IMG/VR virus record: IMGVR_UViG_3300042502_001233
Location: 186,001-250,000 of that record
Strand: one strand, 5' to 3'
Length of the DNA stretch: 64,000 bases
Shown here piece by piece: positions 43,796 to 53,593 of the stretch (its first letter is position 1; each line of letters opens with the position of its first letter). Position numbers and translations under genes: made by a program. Under the pieces are notes generated by a model. It worked only from the letters and a program-made list of their open reading frames with translations. It ran no database searches and had not been told where the DNA came from.

Positions 43796-43918
43796 TTAAT
43801 TTTTAAAACTAAATACCATTAACAAGACAAAACCTATTGCGATTATGACTTGACCCAACAATACCCAACCACTATATTTTAAATCTTTTAGTAATTTTCC
43901 ATATTCATCATGCTTCAT
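43796..43918 (-). CDS. 40-aa single-pass membrane protein
   Basis: Translated by hand as MKHDEYGKLLKDLKYSGWVLLGQVIIAIGFVLLMVFSFKN; overlaps the upstream stop. Confidence 0.45.
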   Translation of the reverse strand: MKHDEYGKLLKDLKYSGWVLLGQVIIAIGFVLLMVFSFKN

Positions 43919-44111
43919 CTTTTTTTATACCTAAGGTTGCGTTTTTATATATTTTTAGTTGGTCTGAAAGATAATGTCTAACATCACCACCATCACAAAG
44001 GACGACACACCAAATGTCATTTTCAAATTGACCACCGTTGGTCACATATATTGCGTAACCTTCTTTGTTACCTTCTACAATTACTGGTATTGGATTTTGG
44101 AACTCTAACAT
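43908..44111 (-). CDS. Small hypothetical protein
   Basis: 67-aa ORF directly after thyA. Confidence 0.6.
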   Translation of the reverse strand: MLEFQNPIPVIVEGNKEGYAIYVTNGGQFENDIWCVVLCDGGDVRHYLSDQLKIYKNATLGIKKDEA

Positions 44112-44114
44112 AAT

Positions 44115-44562
44115 TTAGTTGCTTAAAGGTGCTTTAATTGTTGAGTGTGATTGGTAATTTTCTAGTTCAAATTGAGCTATACTCAGGTAATCTATGTCAA
44201 TTCCTGTTATAGGGCAAGGGTTGAATTTAAGTGTTGGTAACGGAAAAGGTTCTCTCGTTCTTTCAGGAACACTTCCTTGGTGTCTACCAGATAAAAATAT
44301 ATGTTTATGTGAATCAGATGTTAACTTATTATATGTATCCATCGCATATTCATTTTCTTTATTACCCCATAATTCAAATCTTTCATTTAATATTAATTCT
44401 CTACCAATCTGTTCTTTTGCTTGTTCAATATGGTTTGAATATAAATGAACATCACCCAAATTCCCAATCAATTGGTCAGGAACCATATTAACTGATTTTG
44501 CTATTATTTCTAATAACAATCCATAAGAAGCAATGTTAAATGGTAACCCTAAAAACGTATCT
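44115..44562 (-). CDS. thyA: Thymidylate synthase C-terminal chain, exon 2
   Basis: After splicing it reads (V)DTFLGLPFNIASYG...GDVHLYSNH...IKAPLSN. Confidence 0.92.
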
Positions 44563-45577
44563 CATTATATTCATATAAGGTCGTTAATCTTACACAGTTC
44601 TCTTATGAACTTCTTTATGTTTCCATAAAGATTAGACTATATCACAACCCAAATATTTGGGTTTTCATCTTTTCCACTCACTTGAGTGTACTCCCTGTCG
44701 GGATAGTCGTTAGGCATTTATTTATATTGATAATCTGGGTAATTAATACTTTTAATTCTGTTTAAAATTGTTGCTGGTTTAACATTGAAAACTCTAGCAC
44801 ATTCTGATAAAGATTTAAACTCTTCATCGTTAACGATTACTATTTTTTCTTGGTTACCATTATATTTCCCAGTTCTTTTCTCACTTAAAATTTTTTTGGT
44901 TTCTTGTGAATGTTGTTTATTAAAAAATGGGTTATTTTCACCACTTCTATCTAAACATTTTATACATTTTTTTGTCACACTATCTATTCTAGAACCACAT
45001 TCACAAAAAGTTTTACCACCTTTCCAATTAGGATTATCACTTTTAAATCTTGGTTCTTGTTTAGGTGCCTTTCTAAGGTTTTCAATCGCTTTTTTGATTA
45101 TATTAACTTTATTTGGGTGGTTAGATATTAAATCACCACCACTAGCACTTTTCGAAACATTGTATAGTTCATTAAAAGATATTGAATCTAATAATTCTTG
45201 TTCTTTATCTTTATAATTTTCACATTCTAAAATAATTTCTAATTTAAAATTATCTTCACCGTATTTATTAAACGCTCTTTGTAAATGAATACAATGGTGT
45301 TTATTTTTTCTAAGTTCGTTAAAATGTTTTAAAGTTCTTTTTTTTATTTCTTTAGTACTACCTAAATAGTATTTGTTCGTTTCTAAATTAATAATTTTAT
45401 AAATGTATCCCATAATGTTTTTATTATAAATATGTAGATAAATTAAAAAGTAACCCTAAAACGGTATCATCATAAATTTTAGCACGGGATTGTCTACAAC
45501 ATAACTTGTTTAGGTGTTCCCCGTTTAGATGAATTTTTCGAAACATATTACTATGTTAAGCCGCAGATTTTTCGTTT
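44563..45577 (-). mobile_element. Group I self-splicing intron (1015 nt) in thyA
   Basis: The 5' exon ends CCGU and pairs with IGS GCGG (U-G wobble). IGS AUCU pairs with 3' exon AGAU (P10). P3 UUCAUCU/AGAUGAA, R element AACGACUA, S element GAUAUAGUC and a terminal G are all present. Splicing restores RSVDTFLGLPFN in frame. Confidence 0.92.
44718..45413 (-). CDS. Intron-encoded GIY-YIG endonuclease (I-TevI-like architecture)
   Basis: YIYKIINLETNKYYLGST, a CECG...CIKC zinc finger, NUMOD3-like NPFFNKQHSQETK and a C-terminal HTH; has its own ATATTTAT motif at 45426-45433. Confidence 0.9.
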   Translation of the reverse strand: MGYIYKIINLETNKYYLGSTKEIKKRTLKHFNELRKNKHHCIHLQRAFNKYGEDNFKLEIILECENYKDKEQELLDSISFNELYNVSKSASGGDLISNHPNKVNIIKKAIENLRKAPKQEPRFKSDNPNWKGGKTFCECGSRIDSVTKKCIKCLDRSGENNPFFNKQHSQETKKILSEKRTGKYNGNQEKIVIVNDEEFKSLSECARVFNVKPATILNRIKSINYPDYQYK

Positions 45578-45999
45578 ACGGAACGTTGACTCCACATTAA
45601 AGAGATTGTTCTGGTTGGAATCCCAGTTAAATCATTACCTTCCATATTTACTGAATCGTAACCATATTTTTTCCAATATAAATCTTCTCTTTCTTTTTGA
45701 CTCAACTCTCTTGTATAAACTTGAAAATCTGTGTGACAAGGTGGTAGCACCATATCTTTAAGTTTATGTGGTTGCCAAGCAGAAACTCTAAGTCTTCTAG
45801 AATCTGGGTTATTTTTTAACCCATCTATTAATTCAGTTATTTGGTCAACACCTTCAAAGTTACGCCAACCAGAACCATAAATAGGTCCTAAATCACCAAA
45901 ACGTTTAGAAAAGTCCTCATCGTTTTTAATTCGTTCAATAAATTCTTCCTGACTCAACGGTCTACCAGATTCATGTAAATCTTCTTTTTTTACTTTCAT
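45578..45999 (-). CDS. thyA: Thymidylate synthase C-terminal chain, exon 1
   Basis: [20 protein letters not shown] (catalytic Cys) and WSQRSV. Confidence 0.9.
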
Positions 46000-46331
46000 T
46001 CTTTTTTATTTTTATTTATGTTATTTAATTTCTCACATTCTTTTAGATACGCTTTATAAGCATCTCCATTCCAAATGTTACAGTCATTCTTTAAAAGATA
46101 TTCTATTGAAGTATCACCTCGTAAGAACCAAAGAAGTTCTGTTACGATTGTTTTAAATGGCATCTTTTTGGTTGTAAGTAAAGGAAACCCATCTTTCATA
46201 TCGTGACGTATTTGTCTTCCGAATACTGAGATTGTTCCTGTACCAGTACGGTCAGATTTAGGGGTGCCGTTATCAAGAATGTCTTGAAGAAGTTCCGTGT
46301 AATCTTTGTCTAACTTGTTTATAAATCCCAT
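45996..46331 (-). CDS. thyA: Thymidylate synthase N-terminal fragment (separate ORF)
   Basis: [23 protein letters not shown] and NIW; ends in a TGA that overlaps the ATG of the next part (ATGA). Confidence 0.9.
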
Positions 46332-46355
46332 AGGCTTTTTCTTTTACGTTTTATT

Positions 46356-46508
46356 TTATCTAGTAGTAACTGTAGTATCAGCGCTATCATTTGTATCTTC
46401 TTCTTCATCTTTTATTTCTGTAATGTGTTGATACCACAATGGGTTTGGTAATCCACTATAATGGTCCCATAACCCATCATCAATAAGATTTACTTTATTT
46501 TTCGTCAT
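46356..46508 (-). CDS. 50-aa hypothetical protein
   Basis: Translated by hand as MTKNKVNLIDDGLWDHYSGLPNPLWY... Confidence 0.5.
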   Translation of the reverse strand: MTKNKVNLIDDGLWDHYSGLPNPLWYQHITEIKDEEEDTNDSADTTVTTR

Positions 46509-48259: not shown

Positions 48260-50068
48260 ATGAACAGAGAAATTTATCCTAAAGTTAAAATAATTATGAA
48301 TCAAGCTATCAAAGAAGCTAAAAGTTTCGATGATACTAAAATAAGACCTGAACATATTATCCTATCAATGATGATTGATAATGATAATGAATGTACTAGG
48401 CTTTTAAATCAAATGAAAGTAGATACCTTTGACTTATATGATAAAGTCTCTGATTATTTAAGACAAAGCGATTTAACCCCAAGAGTTGCAAACACAAGTA
48501 GAAAAACGTTACCATTTTCAGATGAAACAAAAGCAATTATCAAAAGCCTTGATAAAGAATGTGAAAAGTTAAATCATAATATGATTGATACAACACATGT
48601 TATGCTAGGTATTTTAGCAGCAAAGCTACCGATAAATGAATTGTTATCTAAAAGTGGTATAACGTATAACCGTTTTAAAAAAACATTAAAAGATATGGAA
48701 AATTACGATGTAAAAAACAGTGCATTTAGTGGTGATGACCACGAAGAAAACGACAGTTTTAGAAAAAAACCTAACAGACCAAACGACTCTAAATCAAAAA
48801 CACCAGTGTTGGATAACTTCTGTAGAGACGTATCCAAAGCTGTAGAAAAAGGAGAAATAGACCCAGTGGTTGGTCGTGAAGTTGAAATCAAAAGAGTTTC
48901 ACAAATACTTTCACGTAGAAAGAAAAATAACCCAGTACTTATCGGAGAACCAGGCGTTGGTAAAACAGCCATCGTAGAAGGACTCGCACAGCTTATCTAT
49001 GAAGGTAACGCACCTAGAACACTTACTGGTAAAAAAATATTTACCTTGGATTTGGCTAGTATCGTTGCTGGTACAAAATATAGAGGTCAGTTTGAAGAAC
49101 GAATGAAAGCCGTGTTGGAAGAATGTAAAGCCAACCCAGATATTGTGTTATTTATTGACGAGTTACACACAATTGTTGGTGCTGGGAATTCCTCAGGTTC
49201 GTTAGATGCTAGTAACATCTTTAAACCAGCTTTGGCCAGAGGTGAAATACAAATCATCGGAGCAACAACACTAGATGAATACCGCGAAAACATTGAAAAA
49301 GATGGTGCGCTTACTAGACGTTTCCAACAAGTTCTTGTTGAGGAACCTACTCTAGAGCAAACCAAAACTATTTTGATGAATATCAAAGAAAAATACGAAA
49401 AACATCACAGAGTAAAATATACTGAAGAAGCTATTGACGAGTGTGTTAAACTATCTTCTAGATACATAATGGATAGAGCTATGCCAGACAAAGCCATCGA
49501 TGTATTGGATGAAGCTGGCGCCACCACAAACGTTAGTGTTGAAAAACCAGAAAATGTCAAGACTTTAGAATCTCAAATTAGTGAAATCCAAGTTCAAAAA
49601 AATGAAGTTGTTAAAAAACAACAATACGAAGAGGCGGCCAAGTTAAGAGATAAAGAAAAAGAATTAGATGACAAATTAAAAGAAGCCAACGCTAAATGGC
49701 AAGAAGAATTAGAATCTAATATTACGGAAGTTGGTGTTGACTTGATTTCAGAAGTTGTTTCTATGATGACTGGAATCCCACTTAATAAAATTTCAACACA
49801 AGAAACCAAAAAATTACTTAACATGGACAAAGCTCTTATGGGTAAAGTTATCGGTCAAGACGTAGCTGTATCTAAAGTAGTTAAAGCCATCAAACGTAAC
49901 CGTATCGGTATCAAAGATAAAAACAAACCAGTTGGTTCGTTCATCTTCTTAGGTCCTACTGGAGTTGGTAAATGTATTTGTGGTGATACAGAAATAATAG
50001 TCAGAAATAAAGTAACTGGTGAGATTAAAATTATTAACATAAAAAATATCGTACCCGACACCAATTAG
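48260..50068 (+). CDS. clpC: ClpC-type AAA+ unfoldase, N-terminal half fused to a split-intein N fragment
   Basis: Clp N-domain, [15 protein letters not shown], a UVR-like M-domain ([11 protein letters not shown]), then FLGPTGVGK|CICGDT... Confidence 0.93.
49973..50065 (+). mobile_element. Split intein N fragment (31 aa)
   Basis: [31 protein letters not shown], an intein block A beginning with Cys1 right after the Walker A lysine. Confidence 0.85.
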
Positions 50069-50114
50069 TCCGAACTTTTTAAAACTTCATGATATTTATT
50101 ATAAAATAGATATT

Positions 50115-51335
50115 ATGAAAATAAAAACGAGTAAAGGTATTAAAGAAATAAATGAAGTTTTTACAGATTTGGAAAGTTTAAAAAACCAAGTCTTAAAATT
50201 AGATAAAAACATACGCTACGATAACGAAACAATTAAAAAAGAAATAGAATCACTGATGGTTAAATTAAAAGAACAAGAAGGTGTTGTTTCATTATCGTTG
50301 ATGCGTGGTTGGTTGGTGAAAAATTACGGTTTTAAAACTAAGAAATGGGGTAATATAGAGTATTTCATTGAACGTGGTTGGAATGATAAAGACGCTTTGA
50401 TTGAGTTGGATAAACGTAATAAAGAATTAAAACAAAGGAACCGTTTATGTGAAGAGTATTGGATTAATAAAGGTTACACTAAAGAAGAAGCTATTAACGA
50501 AATTTCTAAACAACAACAAAAATCATCTAAATGTGTTAAAACTTATCATGGTAAATCTAAAAAAATGTTAGCTGATAAAGGTTACACCGAAGAAGAAATA
50601 AAACGTATTTGTTTAACACCAACAAATTCTGAATTCTGGGTTAATAAGGGGTATTCTGAAAATGAGGCAAAAGATATTATTAGTAAAAACCAAACTGAAG
50701 CTGCGAAACAAGTTGATTTTGAAAAAAGACTAATACCATCAAATATTGAGTATTGGGTTGAGAAAGGTTTTAATTATCAACAAGCTAAACTAAAAGTAAC
50801 TGAACAACAAACAACTTTTAGTTTAGCTATATGTATTCAAAAATATGGTGAAGAAGAAGGTAAAAAAAGATTTACTGAAAGACAAAATAAATGGTTAAAT
50901 TCATTATTAACTAATGGTAATATGGTTATTGGATATTCTAAAATATCTCAAGATTTGTTCTATAAAATTTTAGAAATATATGATATTAGTGATAAAGATA
51001 AGGTTTATTTCGCAACACACAATAGTGAGTTCAAATTAGGTAAAAAAGAAGGTGGTGTTTGGTTATATGATTTTACCGATATTAAAAATAAAAAAATAAT
51101 TGAGTTTCATGGTGATATGTTCCATGGAAACCCAAATAAATATAAAGCTGGTGATTATCCACACCCATTTAGGAAAAATATAACCGCACAAGAAATGTGG
51201 AATAAGGATAAAAGTAAATTAGATGTTGCCTTAGAAGAAGGTTTTGATGTGTTGGTTATATGGGATTCAGAATATAGATGGGGAAACAAACAAGAAATAA
51301 TAAATAAATGTGTTTCTTTTCTAAATAAAAAGTAG
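50115..51335 (+). CDS. Vsr/DUF559-like (PD-(D/E)xK) putative homing endonuclease with repeated (Y/F)WxxKGY...EEA modules
   Basis: C-terminal YDF...IIEFHGDMFHG...DKSK...EEGFDVLVIWDSE; located between the intein halves. Confidence 0.75.
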   Translation: MKIKTSKGIKEINEVFTDLESLKNQVLKLDKNIRYDNETIKKEIESLMVKLKEQEGVVSLSLMRGWLVKNYGFKTKKWGNIEYFIERGWNDKDALIELDKRNKELKQRNRLCEEYWINKGYTKEEAINEISKQQQKSSKCVKTYHGKSKKMLADKGYTEEEIKRICLTPTNSEFWVNKGYSENEAKDIISKNQTEAAKQVDFEKRLIPSNIEYWVEKGFNYQQAKLKVTEQQTTFSLAICIQKYGEEEGKKRFTERQNKWLNSLLTNGNMVIGYSKISQDLFYKILEIYDISDKDKVYFATHNSEFKLGKKEGGVWLYDFTDIKNKKIIEFHGDMFHGNPNKYKAGDYPHPFRKNITAQEMWNKDKSKLDVALEEGFDVLVIWDSEYRWGNKQEIINKCVSFLNKK

Positions 51336-51346
51336 TATATTTGTAT

Positions 51347-51724
51347 ATGAAAATAAAATTTAATATAAAACTATATAAGATAAAAATTATACTGTATATT
51401 TCAGATGATTTAATTAGTGTGGCTGACAAGATTAAGAAAAACCACAAAGTAAAACTATATAAATTATCGAATAAAGAAATAAAAAAAATAGATGGTTGTG
51501 TTATTGGTCAATTTATGGAAAATGATAATTTACTTTATGTTTTGATTCAATCTAAAAATGGTAAGGTATGTATTAACACACTAACACACGAAATTTATCA
51601 TTTAACTAGTAAAATAATGAAACATAATGATTTTGATTTTTATCATTCTGACGAACCATTTGCAAGATTAAATGCTTTTTTAAATAAAAAAATTATTAAA
51701 AATAAAAAAATTAAATTAATATGA
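51347..51724 (+). CDS. Small HExxH (zincin-like) protein nested in the fractured clpC
   Basis: NTLTHEIYHLT...DEPFARL; TATATTTG promoter element at 51336-51343. Confidence 0.55.
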   Translation: MKIKFNIKLYKIKIILYISDDLISVADKIKKNHKVKLYKLSNKEIKKIDGCVIGQFMENDNLLYVLIQSKNGKVCINTLTHEIYHLTSKIMKHNDFDFYHSDEPFARLNAFLNKKIIKNKKIKLI

Positions 51725-51924
51725 ATGAAATTAATGCTGGTTGTTATAAATTAACAACAACTAAAAAAACCACAAATGGTTTGAAAACACAAGAATATAT
51801 TGTTTTAATTAGTGGTTATAAACCCTTCTTAAAGATGGAATCGTTCTGGTCAATAAAAGATAATTGTTTTGTTAGTTCAGATATTCTCAGAGCTGTAGAA
51901 ACTAAATACGAAAAAATTAATTAA
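51721..51924 (+). CDS. Small hypothetical protein nested in the fractured clpC
   Basis: 67-aa ORF overlapping the upstream stop. Confidence 0.55.
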   Translation: MNEINAGCYKLTTTKKTTNGLKTQEYIVLISGYKPFLKMESFWSIKDNCFVSSDILRAVETKYEKIN

Positions 51925-51931
51925 TAAAAAT

Positions 51932-53593
51932 ATGGAAGATTTAAAAAAATTCATGGATGACACTGTTAAATGTGAAATTCTAAAATACGCTAGTTATGAC
52001 GATAAAAATGGTGGTATTGCTAAACCAGAATATAAATTTACTGTTCTAATCAGAACGCTAAATTTTGAAAATAAAACTAATAATGATATAAAATTAATTA
52101 TTGATGAGGCTGGTTTGTTATTAAATTACGATAATTGTCATGTTTCAATGTTTTCTATCGGTAAACTAAACGGAGAAGTTTTTTCAGTTAATGAAACTGA
52201 TGATGACTTTGCTGTCTTAGATAAACATTTAAGTGATGGTAAAACAATTGTTTTATATTCTGCTAAAATTGATACTGGAAAAGTGTATTACAGATATTCT
52301 TTGGTTAAAGATAAACCATTAAATAGAATGGAAGAAATTAAAAAAAGAGTTGATAAATCAGATAATGTTTTATTATTTGATAAACACGAATTAGAGTCTT
52401 TAAAAAAGATTACTAAAACAACCAAAATATCTGATTATGAAGTTTTAACTGATGATGGTTTTGTTGACATAGAGGCATTACACGAAACAATACCGTATGA
52501 AGTATATCATCTAAAATTAAAAGACGGTAAAGAACTTAAATGTGCTGATAATCATATTGTATTCGTTAGTGAATACCATGAAACTACTTTTGAACCAATT
52601 GGTTTAACCGAAATATTTGTTAAAAATTTAGAAATAGGTTCGTTTGTTATGGTGTCTGATGATAACGGTAATCTAACAGAATCTGAAGTTGTTGAACTTA
52701 CGAATTTAGGTTATGAAGAAGTAATGTATGACCTTGAACTAAAAGAAGGTTCCAATAGACGATATTATACCAATGGTATTTTATCACATAATACGATGTT
52801 GGCTAAATTGTTAGCAGAAGAAGTATTTGGTGATGCTGATTCATTGTTTAGAATCGATATGTCTGAGTATATGGAGAAATTCTCTGTGTCGAGATTGGTT
52901 GGTCCACCTCCTGGATATGTTGGGTATGAACAAGGTGGTCAATTGACTGAGAAAGTTCGTAGAAAACCACACTGTGTTGTTTTGTTTGATGAGATTGAAA
53001 AAGCTCATGAAGATGTATTCAACTTGTTATTACAAATGCTAGATGAAGGTCATTTGACTGACGGATTAGGTCGTAAAGTTAATTTCAAAAATGCTCTTAT
53101 TATCATGACATCTAACATTGGTGTTAAAGAAGCAAACTCATTTGGTAAGACAATGGGTCTTGAGACACCAAACGGAATGTTAAATGAAGAAAACAAAGCG
53201 CGCGCTATTATCGAAAAAGCTCTTAAAAAGAAATTCAAACCAGAGTTCTTAAACCGTATCGATGAAGCAATTATCTTCAACAGCCTTAAACGCGAAGACA
53301 TCCACGAAATCATCAACGTTGAGTTTGAAAAACTTAGAAAAAGAGTTGTTGAAATGGGTTACGATTTAACCATTGAACAAGCAGCGTTAGATTTCTTGGC
53401 AGAACATGGATACGATGAAGAATACGGAGCTAGACCTCTTACCAGAACACTTCAACATTATGTAGAAGATACGGTGGCTGATGAAATTTTGGCTGACCAT
53501 ATTGTCGAAGGACAAACCATCAATATCGTTTATGATAAAGATAACGATACATTGATTGTAAAACAACCAAAAACACCCAAACCAAAAAAATAA
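51932..53593 (+). CDS. clpC: Split-intein C fragment fused to the C-terminal half of ClpC
   Basis: ...YYTNGILSHN|TMLAKLL..., RIDMSEYMEK, GPPPGYVGYEQGGQLTE, LFDEIEKAH, TSNIG, PEFLNRID and YGARPL. Confidence 0.93.
   Translation: MEDLKKFMDDTVKCEILKYASYDDKNGGIAKPEYKFTVLIRTLNFENKTNNDIKLIIDEAGLLLNYDNCHVSMFSIGKLNGEVFSVNETDDDFAVLDKHLSDGKTIVLYSAKIDTGKVYYRYSLVKDKPLNRMEEIKKRVDKSDNVLLFDKHELESLKKITKTTKISDYEVLTDDGFVDIEALHETIPYEVYHLKLKDGKELKCADNHIVFVSEYHETTFEPIGLTEIFVKNLEIGSFVMVSDDNGNLTESEVVELTNLGYEEVMYDLELKEGSNRRYYTNGILSHNTMLAKLLAEEVFGDADSLFRIDMSEYMEKFSVSRLVGPPPGYVGYEQGGQLTEKVRRKPHCVVLFDEIEKAHEDVFNLLLQMLDEGHLTDGLGRKVNFKNALIIMTSNIGVKEANSFGKTMGLETPNGMLNEENKARAIIEKALKKKFKPEFLNRIDEAIIFNSLKREDIHEIINVEFEKLRKRVVEMGYDLTIEQAALDFLAEHGYDEEYGARPLTRTLQHYVEDTVADEILADHIVEGQTINIVYDKDNDTLIVKQPKTPKPKK
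52328..52792 (+). mobile_element. Split intein C fragment (about 155 aa from the internal Met133)
   Basis: VLTDDGF, ELKCADNHIVF (block B, with a CxxH variant of TxxH), MYDLEL (block F) and SHN|T (block G). Confidence 0.85.

What the first reader, a model, noticed from the sequence alone, without database searches (positions are those of the whole stretch)
45578..46331. Naturally split thymidylate synthase (two chains), in addition to the intron
ThyA is broken between NIW and GDLGPIYG, exactly in the variable small-domain insert. The N part (111 aa) ends in an AT-rich tail ([11 protein letters not shown]) that resembles this genome's intergenic A-rich leaders, and its TGA overlaps the ATG of the C part (ATGA coupling, -1 frame). 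All catalytic residues are retained: Arg in DRTG, RR, Cys in PPCH, RS, and Asn in PFN. This points to real gene fission with the enzyme assembling from 111-aa and 289-aa chains, although a rare -1 slip at AAA AAA G is possible. A two-piece, intron-containing ThyA would be unusual.
Basis: partly seen in the sequence, partly recalled or inferred. Interest (0 to 1): 0.7.

Follow-up and report, generated by a model that had tools for sequence, protein, structure and literature searches.

The report
Naturally two-piece phage thymidylate synthase
A 362-kb freshwater phage encodes thymidylate synthase as two separately translated pieces, the second also interrupted by a self-splicing intron; the same break occurs in many related uncultured phages, usually with a mobile endonuclease gene between the halves, so it is a real, selected gene-in-pieces, not an error or a dead gene.

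Summary
thyA lies on the minus strand as an N cistron (46331-45996, 111 aa) and a C cistron (starts 45999). They overlap by ATGA, and the C frame is -1 relative to N. The C cistron carries a 1015-nt group I intron (45577-44563) that encodes an I-TevI-like endonuclease. Splicing gives a 289-aa chain.

The break is real. Contigs from three sequencing runs cross it without any difference, and six other assemblies of diverged phages carry the identical junction.

A search with the 111-aa piece found thousands of short relatives. Of the best 120, 114 are 102-116 aa, and those aligned share the tail AYLKECEKL. In 12 sequenced relatives, a free-standing homing-endonuclease-type ORF of 0.6-1.0 kb separates the halves, so two polypeptides are obligatory there.

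Both halves are under purifying selection (N part dN/dS median 0.10; C part pN/pS 0.06-0.25). A complex model of the closest intron-free pair passes its controls (0.86 against 0.00).

The window's endonuclease-free junction belongs to a ~1.45-kb cassette (junction, C exon 1, intron) that is 92-100% identical among otherwise diverged phages. I infer that it spread by intron homing.

A frameshift is unnecessary and poorly supported. I file this as a new member (ThyA) of the known class of endonuclease-fragmented phage genes.

The parts
45996..46331 (-). thyA-N cistron: 111 aa plus TGA. It holds the N-terminal third of ThyA, including the DRTGTGT arginine and the ELLWFL glutamate.
   Evidence: ORF list. 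Pfam PF00303, 1e-31, profile positions 1-93. NCBIfam TIGR03284, 127.6 bits. The identical 111-aa protein is on record on 9 contigs.
45999..46040 (-). N-terminal piece's tail, [14 protein letters not shown]. Its 3' part also serves as the A-rich leader of the C cistron.
   Evidence: The 20 nt upstream of the C start are 80% A, against a leader median of 52.5% and an internal coding mean of 38%. The tail is identical in L008, L031, L091 and L092.
45996..45999 (-). ATGA overlap: the stop of N and the start of C, with the C frame at -1. An in-frame TAA lies 9 nt upstream of the ATG in the C frame (46008-46006).
   Evidence: Read directly from the sequence. At least two clear ATGA-coupled gene pairs occur elsewhere in the window.
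45578..45999 (-). thyA-C exon 1, from [14 protein letters not shown] to SQRS plus the first two bases of a Val codon. It holds [13 protein letters not shown] and LPPCH.
   Evidence: pN/pS over the first 97 codons among endonuclease-free split forms is 0.06-0.25.
44563..45577 (-). Group I intron, 1015 nt. The 5' exon ends in U (45578) and the intron ends in G (44563).
   Evidence: Exon joining restores QRS-V-DTFLGLPFN, colinear with intron-free relatives. The intron matches T-even td genes and Twort introns by blastn.
44613..44740 (-). 3' catalytic core of the group I intron, including GAUAUAGUC.
   Evidence: Rfam RF00028, 32.1 bits (gathering 50), E 7.4e-7, model positions 159-253. Found only when this 201-nt stretch was searched alone. 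The whole-region scan missed it.
44718..45413 (-). Intron-encoded I-TevI-like GIY-YIG homing endonuclease, 231 aa.
   Evidence: Pfam I-TevI_ZnF 1.8e-10, GIY-YIG 8.9e-8, NUMOD3 6.1e-7.
44115..44562 (-). thyA-C exon 2, from (V)DTFLGLPFN to IKAPLSN plus TAA.
44557..46023 (.). Horizontally shared cassette of about 1.45 kb: N tail and junction, C exon 1, the intron with its endonuclease, and the first bases of exon 2.
   Evidence: The cassette is 92-100% identical to L031, L091 and L092. The N core is 72-87% identical, exon 2 is 77-90% and the flanks about 50%.
45619..45723 (-). Hypervariable patch inside the cassette (second ThyA insert, after YTREL).
   Evidence: 36-59% identity with indels against L031, L091 and L092. 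Many length-variant joints occur here in lake metagenomes.

Best explanation
The phage's thymidylate synthase gene is a genuine gene-in-pieces.

**How it is expressed.** One mRNA carries two cistrons. ThyA-N (111 aa) ends at a TGA that overlaps the ATG of ThyA-C. The A-rich end of the N cistron serves as the leader for starting or restarting translation at that ATG. The C cistron is completed by self-splicing of a group I intron, giving 289 aa.

**How it works.** The two chains assemble non-covalently into an ordinary ThyA fold. The cut lies in the surface small-domain insert, where the N tail helix packs on the C head helix. The assembled unit presumably dimerises like other ThyA enzymes.

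**Where it came from.** The cut is inherited from a lineage in which a free-standing homing endonuclease gene sits between the halves. The window's endonuclease-free ATGA junction is a derived, compact version. It is physically part of a ~1.45-kb cassette that spread among diverged phages, most likely by homing of the I-TevI-like intron with co-conversion of the upstream exon.

**Shown:** the anatomy, reproducibility of the DNA, distribution of the split, selection on both halves, and the mosaic cassette.

**Inferred:** translational coupling, assembly and activity, homing as the means of spread, and endonuclease loss as the origin of the compact junction.
For: - **DNA is reproducible.** Three runs give colinear, identical contigs across the junction. 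The same ATGA junction is in L008, L031, L091, L092, L093 and L094, from other assemblies.
- **The split is widespread.** 4654 short relatives were found. Of the best 120, 114 are 102-116 aa, some on contigs up to 344 kb, and the N pieces aligned share the tail AYLKECEKL.
- **Separate translation is forced in relatives.** Twelve relatives have gaps of 609-1008 nt holding GIY-YIG/NUMOD1, HNH/NUMOD3 or DUF7487 ORFs. Only about 40 nt is non-coding and the ORF overlaps the C start, so there is no room for an intron.
- **Selection acts on both halves.** N part dN/dS has a median of 0.10 and a maximum of 0.21 among 15 split forms. The C part's first 97 codons have pN/pS 0.06-0.25 among endonuclease-free forms.
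- **Catalytic motifs are complete**, and NCBIfam thymidylate synthase equivalog models match.
- **Complex model of the syntenic L087 pair.** ipSAE is 0.86 against a best control of 0.00. That mark was reached by 51 of 78 solved complexes and 2 of 108 mismatched pairs. The runs agree in at least 97% of contacts, and the partner's pLDDT is 89. N tail residues 87-102 touch C head residues 5-45.
- **Mosaic cassette**.
- **Association with the intron.** The intron is present in 5 of 5 readable endonuclease-free forms and in 0 of 9 readable endonuclease-bearing forms.
- **Coupling is normal here.** ATGA coupling and A-rich leaders are ordinary in this genome.
- **Precedents.** Aeh1 nrdA/mobE, T4 39/60, and gene 43 of phages 25 and 44RR (PMC2988022, PMC3045599).
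Against: - No enzyme assay and no protein evidence exist.
- No RNA from this phage was found. RNA runs held only ~96% relatives, and one contig crosses the 5' splice site unspliced, which may be DNA.
- The complex score may reflect the model's memory of the ThyA fold, and it was obtained on a relative's pair (91% identical N part), not the window's.
- A selfish cassette could spread even if it damaged thyA.
- With the insert columns removed, the tree of the catalytic core scatters the split forms (8 changes). A single clade is only narrowly not rejected (p-AU 0.066). Single origin therefore rests on the shared tail and head, not on the tree.
- Only contigs, not raw reads, were seen at the junction, and the tool masks 45992-46027 as low complexity.
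Confidence: 0.8

Rival explanations
1. A programmed -1 ribosomal frameshift, or transcriptional slippage, on the A run (AAT AAA AAA GAA TGA) fuses N and C into one ~400-aa chain. The split would then be only apparent.
For: A six-A run followed by G sits just before the stop. A -1 shift there gives ...NKNKK-R-MKVKK... in frame with C. The junction nucleotides are identical in all endonuclease-free forms.
Against: - The zero-frame codons are AAA AAA GAA, so the classical A AAA AAG heptamer is out of phase.
- An in-frame TAA 9 nt upstream of the ATG leaves only a two-codon window.
- No downstream structure is detectable (121 nt, z = +0.40).
- Six A's are short for polymerase slippage (my own knowledge).
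- Junction identity is explained by the whole 1.45-kb cassette being near-identical, synonymous sites included.
- Relatives with 0.6-1.0 kb between the halves cannot frameshift, yet keep both halves under selection.
- The C piece keeps its own ATG and an A-rich leader.
Confidence: 0.06
2. The gene is a broken pseudogene. thyA was inactivated by a mobile-element scar, the fragments are not (or no longer) functional, and the phage relies on the host enzyme.
For: Selfish homing could spread a damaging cassette. There is no expression or activity evidence for this phage. The region is full of mobile DNA.
Against: - Purifying selection acts on both halves, including within the cassette after it arose.
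- All catalytic motifs are intact.
- Both ORFs and the intron are intact in at least five diverged genomes.
- The split state persists across more than 100 protein clusters.
- The tail and head are conserved.
Confidence: 0.08
3. A sequencing or assembly artefact: a one-base homopolymer error in the A run.
For: The break lies in a low-complexity A-rich stretch. The reads tool masks 45992-46027.
Against: Identical colinear contigs come from three Illumina-type runs filed under three different studies. The same junction is present in six other assemblies of phages whose N parts differ by 13-28% at the nucleotide level. The tail is a conserved protein sequence in over 100 clusters.
Confidence: 0.02
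4. The two chains form a ThyA-fold enzyme with a different chemistry, such as a dUMP hydroxymethylase for a modified base. The split is real, but the product is not thymidylate synthase.
For: Phage ThyA homologues include hydroxymethylases (my own knowledge). The whole clade, unsplit members included, has IW-x-GD-A-Y instead of the usual IWDEW.
Against: Asn in LPFN, the Cys-His pair, the DVHLY motif and a ThyA-like C-terminus (IKAPLSN) are all present. NCBIfam thymidylate synthase equivalog TIGR03284 is passed by the unsplit relative (309.6 bits against a cut-off of 108.35) and by each piece.
Confidence: 0.04

Closest known systems
Aeromonas phage Aeh1 nrdA-a/nrdA-b, split by the free-standing HNH endonuclease gene mobE (PMC2988022; Crona et al. 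2010, PMC3045599)
   Same: A nucleotide-metabolism enzyme that is contiguous in relatives is cut into two independently translated polypeptides at a mobile-endonuclease site. No RNA or protein splicing occurs at the cut. The fragments carry tail and head extensions and reassemble.
   Different: The enzyme here is ThyA, for which I found no report. The window itself has no endonuclease between the halves. The tail and head are largely the enzyme's own small-domain helices rather than foreign sequence. Activity is untested here, whereas it was shown for Aeh1.
[quoted passage not shown]
   Same: One split site exists in two states among relatives, with and without an endonuclease gene between the halves. 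This matches the pattern seen for thyA site 1.
   Different: In the window the halves overlap (ATGA) instead of being spaced. The endonuclease-free state is tied to an intron-borne cassette.
Phage T4 td: thymidylate synthase interrupted by a group I intron encoding I-TevI
   Same: The host gene is the same, the endonuclease is I-TevI-like (GIY-YIG plus zinc finger plus NUMOD3), and a group I core is present.
   Different: By my recollection of the T4 sequence, the window's insertion site (after QRS-V, before DTFLGLPFN) is about 5 codons upstream of T4's. This was not checked here. The T4 gene is not additionally split into two cistrons.
[quoted passage not shown] 2009, PMC2677866)
   Same: A phage enzyme gene broken in two with a homing endonuclease gene in the gap. 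The window's own ClpB-like gene looks like this type.
   Different: The ThyA break has no intein motifs. There is no Cys/Ser at the start of an N-intein and no His-Asn at the C junction. The pieces must stay non-covalent.
dnaX-type programmed -1 frameshifting (A AAA AAG)
   Same: An A run followed by G lies at a -1 frame junction.
   Different: The heptamer is out of phase, there is no stimulatory structure, and the signal is absent in relatives whose halves are far apart.

Membership tests
Thymidylate synthase ThyA (PF00303 / TIGR03284) | The profile match covers the family model across the pieces. | tested here: met
   N part matches profile positions 1-93, exon 1 matches 82-155 and exon 2 matches 185-235, each above the Pfam cut-off. 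TIGR03284 gives 127.6 bits for the N part alone, against a cut-off of 108.35.
Thymidylate synthase ThyA (PF00303 / TIGR03284) | Catalytic Cys (PPCH), the four dUMP-phosphate arginines (DRTG, RR, QRS), Asn of PFN, Asp after RS, and the His/Tyr of DVHLY. | tested here: met
   All were read in the translations. The Asp and Asn are only in frame after intron removal.
Thymidylate synthase ThyA (PF00303 / TIGR03284) | Converts dUMP plus methylene-tetrahydrofolate to dTMP. | not testable with these tools
   Needs an enzyme assay or complementation.
Endonuclease-fragmented gene-in-pieces (Aeh1 nrdA type) | The gene is contiguous in relatives and cut here into two ORFs, each with its own start and stop. 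| tested here: met
   64 of the 79 related loci classified are unsplit, including Flavobacterium phage immuto. The window has two ORFs.
Endonuclease-fragmented gene-in-pieces (Aeh1 nrdA type) | A free-standing homing endonuclease gene lies between the halves. | tested here: not met
   It is absent in the window (4-nt overlap). It is present at the same site in 12 relatives, as GIY-YIG/NUMOD1, HNH/NUMOD3 or DUF7487 ORFs. The window is therefore a derived, or possibly ancestral, endonuclease-free state of this kind.
Endonuclease-fragmented gene-in-pieces (Aeh1 nrdA type) | No RNA or protein splicing element at the cut. | tested here: met
   The ORFs overlap, leaving no room for an intron. In relatives only about 40 nt is non-coding. 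No intein motifs flank the cut.
Endonuclease-fragmented gene-in-pieces (Aeh1 nrdA type) | The fragments assemble into an active enzyme. | tested here: inconclusive
   The complex model of the L087 pair scores 0.86 against a best control of 0.00. That mark was reached by 51 of 78 solved complexes and 2 of 108 mismatches; the runs agree in at least 97% of contacts and the partner's pLDDT is 89. This is a prediction on a relative only, and activity is untested.
Programmed -1 ribosomal frameshift site | A slippery heptamer X XXY YYZ in the zero frame. | tested here: not met
   The zero-frame codons are AAA AAA GAA, so A AAA AAG is one base out of phase.
Programmed -1 ribosomal frameshift site | A downstream stimulatory structure, and conservation of the overlap among relatives. 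| tested here: not met
   The fold z-score is +0.40. Twelve relatives have the halves 0.6-1.0 kb apart.
Group I intron with a homing endonuclease (T4 td type) | A group I catalytic core. | tested here: inconclusive
   RF00028 scores 32.1 bits, below the gathering score of 50, but with E 7.4e-7 for the 3' half including GAUAUAGUC. The full-region scan was negative. The intron also matches td genes and Twort introns by blastn.
Group I intron with a homing endonuclease (T4 td type) | Removal restores the host reading frame, with U before the 5' splice site and G as the last intron base. | tested here: met
   Joining ...TCC GT at 45578 to A GAT ACG at 44562 gives QRS-V-DTFLGLPFN, colinear with intron-free relatives.
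Group I intron with a homing endonuclease (T4 td type) | The spliced RNA is observed. | not testable with these tools
   No RNA run holds this phage. RNA contigs of a ~96% relative show no spliced joint.
Split intein | An N-intein starting with Cys/Ser after the N extein, and a C-intein ending in His-Asn before Cys/Ser/Thr. | tested here: not met
   The N piece ends ...NKNKKE and the C piece starts MKVKKED. The ClpB-like gene nearby does have these motifs.

The most novel reading that the evidence does not exclude
The homing-endonuclease cassettes that break thyA may carry their own 'velcro'.

The tail (…[AL]Y-x-x-YLK…) and the head (…[ST]-[KQ]-E-E-F-[IL]-x-K-[IL]-[KR]-T-[DN]…) are copies of the two small-domain helices that flank site 1. 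Relatives have the gene broken at two further sites: after GWRNW (L032, L059), and just before MVLPPCH (L019, L055, L057, L038). Each of these carries a second copy of the tail and head motifs next to an endonuclease gene.

Co-converted flanks of the original site may therefore have become a portable interaction module. It would let the element cut the enzyme at new places without killing it, and it would turn unsplit genes into split ones as it spreads.
Probability: 0.35. Interest if true: 0.8.

Novelty: new member of a known kind. Interest (0 to 1): 0.6.

Why it matters
- **A new substrate for a known process.** Thymidylate synthase is one of the best-studied enzymes and a drug target. A widespread natural two-chain form shows that its fold tolerates a backbone break in the small-domain insert, and it gives a ready-made natural split-enzyme pair.
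- **Annotation.** More than 100 clusters of 'thymidylate synthase' proteins of ~105 aa in public databases are real half-genes, not truncations.
- **Mobile-DNA biology.** The locus holds several states of one site side by side: unsplit, split with three kinds of endonuclease-type ORF, and split without one but linked to an intron cassette. Two further split sites reuse the same tail and head motifs. This makes Crona et al.'s proposal directly testable: that tails inherited with a mobile endonuclease neutralise gene fragmentation.

Tried and rejected
- **Rfam scan of the whole region** (43800-46500, E up to 0.1) found nothing. The 5' intron stretch alone gave only noise. Only the 3' stretch gave the group I hit.
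- **RNA evidence.** Two searches for runs and one lay of four runs, three RNA libraries and one of unrecorded kind, found only ~96% relatives and no spliced joint. They say nothing about the junction, which the tool masks as low complexity. Nothing can be concluded about expression or splicing.
- **Cultured phages.** Neither blastn nor tblastn against 50,697 phage records found a split form. Matches to the N piece stop at residue 96.
- **Literature.** Four full-text searches found no report of a split ThyA. Papers checked for one had none.
- **Tree of the catalytic core without the insert columns** is unresolved: 8 changes, p-AU 0.066 for one clade. The earlier tidy result (1 change, support 62) leaned on the trait's own columns, so I do not claim a single origin from trees.
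- **Deletion 'scar'.** I tried to read the window's junction as a deletion scar of a GIY-YIG gene by comparing it with L010 and L088. There are suggestive A-rich similarities, but the sequence is too low in complexity to decide.
- **The DUF7487 ORF of L087** is not related to the 406-aa ORF inside the window's ClpB gene.
- **Split intein at the ThyA cut** was rejected because the motifs are absent.
- **Sequencing error** was rejected.
Full report
**Where the window lies.** The window is bases 186001-250000 of a 362,018-bp virus record rated complete. The DNA is held by lake-water metagenome runs. It is AT-rich (31% G+C). Its nearest cultured relatives for this gene are the Flavobacterium phages vB_FspM_immuto, whose thyA is a single 423-aa ORF with no intron.

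**The observation.** The minus strand carries an ORF at 46331-45996 (111 aa) and an ORF starting at 45999.

- The first ends ...AAT AAA AAA GAA TGA. The second begins at the ATG formed by the last A of GAA and the TG of the stop. The two therefore share ATGA, and the second frame is -1 relative to the first.
- Pfam Thymidylat_synt covers profile positions 1-93 in the first ORF, 82-155 in the second, and 185-235 in a third ORF at 44519-44115.
- Against solved structures, the first piece aligns to residues 4-101 of a long-form ThyA chain (4dq1_A) and the second to residues 128-214. In the 264-aa chains the cut is at about residue 82/83.
- The catalytic motifs are all present.

**The intron.**

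- Exon 1 ends at T45578 (...CAA CGT TCC GT) and exon 2 begins at A44562 (A GAT ACG TTT TTA GGG TTA CCA TTT AAC). This restores QRS-V-DTFLGLPFN, exactly colinear with the immuto enzyme.
- The intervening 1015 nt end in G and hold a 231-aa ORF with I-TevI zinc-finger, GIY-YIG and NUMOD3 domains.
- They resemble T-even td genes and Twort introns by blastn.
- They contain a group I 3' core: RF00028, 32.1 bits, E 7.4e-7. This is below the curated cut-off and was seen only when the 201-nt stretch was searched alone (negative scans).

**Is the break real in DNA?**

- Logan contigs from runs X1, X2 and X3 (three different studies) cross 45996-45999 colinearly with no difference and no gap. One is a 1624-nt contig at depth 22.
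- The identical junction occurs in six other assemblies of related but diverged phages: L008, L031, L091 (a syntenic 344-kb contig), L092, L093 and L094.
- A homopolymer error is therefore excluded for practical purposes. Raw reads were not available, and the tool masks 45992-46027.

**Is the break shared?** This was the decisive result.

- A search that admits only proteins of 61-194 aa returned 4654 relatives of the 111-aa piece. Of the best 120, 114 are 102-116 aa. Several lie on contigs of 100-344 kb, and the short N pieces I aligned share a conserved tail, AYLKECEKL followed by a few polar residues.
- Of the 80 closest loci in IMG/VR, 64 of those classified are unsplit and 10 are split at this site. 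With loci fetched later, there are 12 split loci with a large gap and 5 or more with the ATGA overlap.
- In the large-gap forms the halves are 609-1008 nt apart. The gap holds one ORF of three different kinds: about 240-270 aa with GIY-YIG and NUMOD1, 216 aa with HNH and NUMOD3, or 323 aa DUF7487.
- Only about 40 nt is non-coding, and the inserted ORF usually abuts or overlaps the start of the C half. That leaves no room for a group I core. In those phages the enzyme must be made as two polypeptides.
- L087, whose N piece is 91% identical to the window's and which shares its gene order (ClpB-like, KTSC and others), has the DUF7487 ORF in the gap.

**Selection.**

- Among 15 split forms, the N piece has pairwise dN/dS with a median of 0.10 and a maximum of 0.21, with dS mostly 0.7 to above 2.
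- Within the endonuclease-free forms alone, the first 97 codons of the C piece show pN/pS 0.06-0.25. For example, the window against L031 has 13 synonymous and 9 non-synonymous differences, and against L091 it has 10 and 3.
- Both frames are therefore being read and constrained in the ATGA-coupled state.

**Assembly.**

- The window's own C chain cannot be handed to the complex tool unaltered because of the intron. I used the intron-free pair of L087 instead.
- The score was 0.86 in all three runs, against a best control of 0.00. That mark was reached by 51 of 78 solved complexes and 2 of 108 mismatched pairs. The runs agree in at least 97% of contacts, and the partner's pLDDT is 89.
- About 265 contacts are predicted. 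The N piece is an integral part of the fold, and its tail (residues 87-102) touches the C head (residues 5-45).
- The pass may come from the model's memory of ThyA structures. It shows that the pieces are compatible with one fold, not that they bind.

**Translation.**

- The 20 nt before the C start are 80% A. Leaders of 60 ORFs in the window have a median of 52.5% A, internal coding 20-mers average 38%, and only 0.4% reach 75%.
- At least two clear ATGA-coupled gene pairs occur elsewhere in the window.
- Termination-reinitiation on an A-rich leader fits what I know of Bacteroidota-type translation starts. This is my own knowledge and was not tested here.

**The frameshift alternative.**

- A -1 shift on the A run would fuse the chains.
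- However, the zero-frame codons are AAA AAA GAA, so the A AAA AAG heptamer is out of phase.
- A TAA in the C frame 9 nt before the ATG leaves a two-codon window.
- The 121 nt downstream fold no better than shuffles (z = +0.40).
- The conservation of the junction is explained by the next point.
- I give this alternative about 6%.

**A travelling cassette.**

- I aligned the window with L031, L091 and L092. The N core is 72-87% identical at the nucleotide level and the flanking genes about 50%.
- From about 46023 (the start of the tail) through C exon 1, the intron and its endonuclease gene, to about 44557 (five bases into exon 2), identity is 92-100%. The exception is a hypervariable patch at 45723-45619. 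Identity then falls to 77-90%.
- All five endonuclease-free forms that can be read carry this intron. None of the nine readable endonuclease-bearing forms does.
- The simplest reading is that the I-TevI-like intron homes into related thyA genes and co-converts about 445 bp of upstream exon, up to and including the compact junction. The endonuclease-free split state would then spread with the intron, and could replace a resident endonuclease gene or an unsplit linker.
- The asymmetry fits a cut in the upstream exon, as for I-TevI (my own knowledge). This step is inference.
- Whether the compact junction arose by deletion of an endonuclease gene could not be settled, because the sequence is too A-rich to read a scar.

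**Origin of the split.**

- A tree that kept some insert columns placed all split forms on one side of a branch (support 62), with the endonuclease-free forms nested among the endonuclease-bearing ones.
- With the insert removed, the core tree is unresolved and needs 8 changes. One clade is narrowly not rejected (p-AU 0.066).
- Given the mosaicism, I think the split region itself moves between thyA backgrounds. I claim common descent only for the tail and head, not for the whole genes.

**Further split sites.** This goes beyond the finding.

- Relatives show two more cuts.
  - After GWRNW: L032 and L059, with an HNH-type gene in L032 that is 56% identical over 94 aa to the site-1 HNH gene of L022.
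  - Just before MVLPPCH: L019, L055, L057 and L038, with GIY-YIG/NUMOD3/I-TevI-DNA-binding genes in L055 and L057.
- Their N pieces end in ...DELY-x-DYLK..., and their C pieces begin with ...[ST]KEEFLEKLKTD.... These are second copies of the motifs that flank site 1.
- The head of L032 aligns residue for residue with the site-1 head of L022 and then jumps 33 residues.
- This suggests that the cassette carried site-1 flanks to new sites, where they may act as interaction tails. Crona et al. proposed this for the Aeh1 NrdA tails (PMC3045599). I rate it 0.35.

**Comparison with what is known.**

- Genes split by free-standing homing endonucleases and reassembled without splicing are documented for Aeh1 nrdA (active enzyme, essential tails), T4 topoisomerase genes 39/60, and DNA polymerase gene 43 of phages 25 and 44RR. 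The last includes an endonuclease-free state (PMC2988022, PMC3045599).
- I found no report of a split ThyA in four full-text searches and none among 50,697 deposited phage genomes.
- The finding is therefore a new member of a known kind. It is real, widespread and unannotated, and its biochemistry is untested.

Noticed in passing
window 48260-53593 (+): The ClpB-like ATPase gene is in two ORFs. The first (48260-50068) ends ...GPTGVGK|[10 protein letters not shown]... plus about 30 aa. The second (51932-53593) has a sub-threshold Intein_splicing match at residues 132-287 and ...GILSHN|TMLAKLL running straight into the AAA_2 domain. Two ORFs lie between them: 50115-51335 (406 aa) and 51341-51724 (127 aa). 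Neither has a Pfam hit, though the first looks Vsr-like by eye. This looks like a split intein at the second Walker A site, a 'fractured gene' in the sense of Dassa et al. 2009 (PMC2677866). Relatives L087, L088 and L091 have one 834-838-aa ORF.
   Followed up: partly
L032:659-2858; L059:3501-3977; L019:3492-5169; L055:3498-5951; L057:3504-5872; L038: Relatives have two further split sites in thyA: after GWRNW and before MVLPPCH. Each has an endonuclease gene or a small ORF in the gap, and each has second copies of the site-1 tail (ELY-x-DYLK) and head (KEEFLEKLKTD) motifs.
   Followed up: partly
window 45619-45723 (-): A hypervariable patch (the ThyA insert after YTREL) sits inside an otherwise 92-100% identical cassette. 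It is 36-59% identical, with indels, between the window and L031, L091 and L092. Many length-variant joints (skips of 68-98 nt) occur here in lake metagenome contigs. It lies 40-145 nt upstream of the intron insertion site. The cause is unknown.
   Followed up: no
L032:316-666; L092:1336-1710; L015 ~2308-2500; L029 ~1738: Small ORFs beside thyA in relatives are made only of ThyA insert-like segments, with no catalytic core. L032's 116-aa ORF matches immuto ThyA residues 86-138 (E 6e-8) and 215-278 (E 0.004). Neither L032:316-666 nor L092:1336-1710 has a Pfam hit. None was seen in the window. Their function is unknown.
   Followed up: partly
window 44563-45577 (-): The intron sits after QRS-V. 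By my recollection that is about 5 codons upstream of the T4 td site, although the endonuclease is I-TevI-like. In L031 the intron endonuclease ORF is shortened to 149 aa and lacks the GIY-YIG N-terminus.
   Followed up: no
window 44000-46400: Method note: the Rfam group I model missed this ORF-bearing intron when the 2.7-kb region was scanned. It found the 3' core only when a 201-nt stretch was searched alone.
   Followed up: yes
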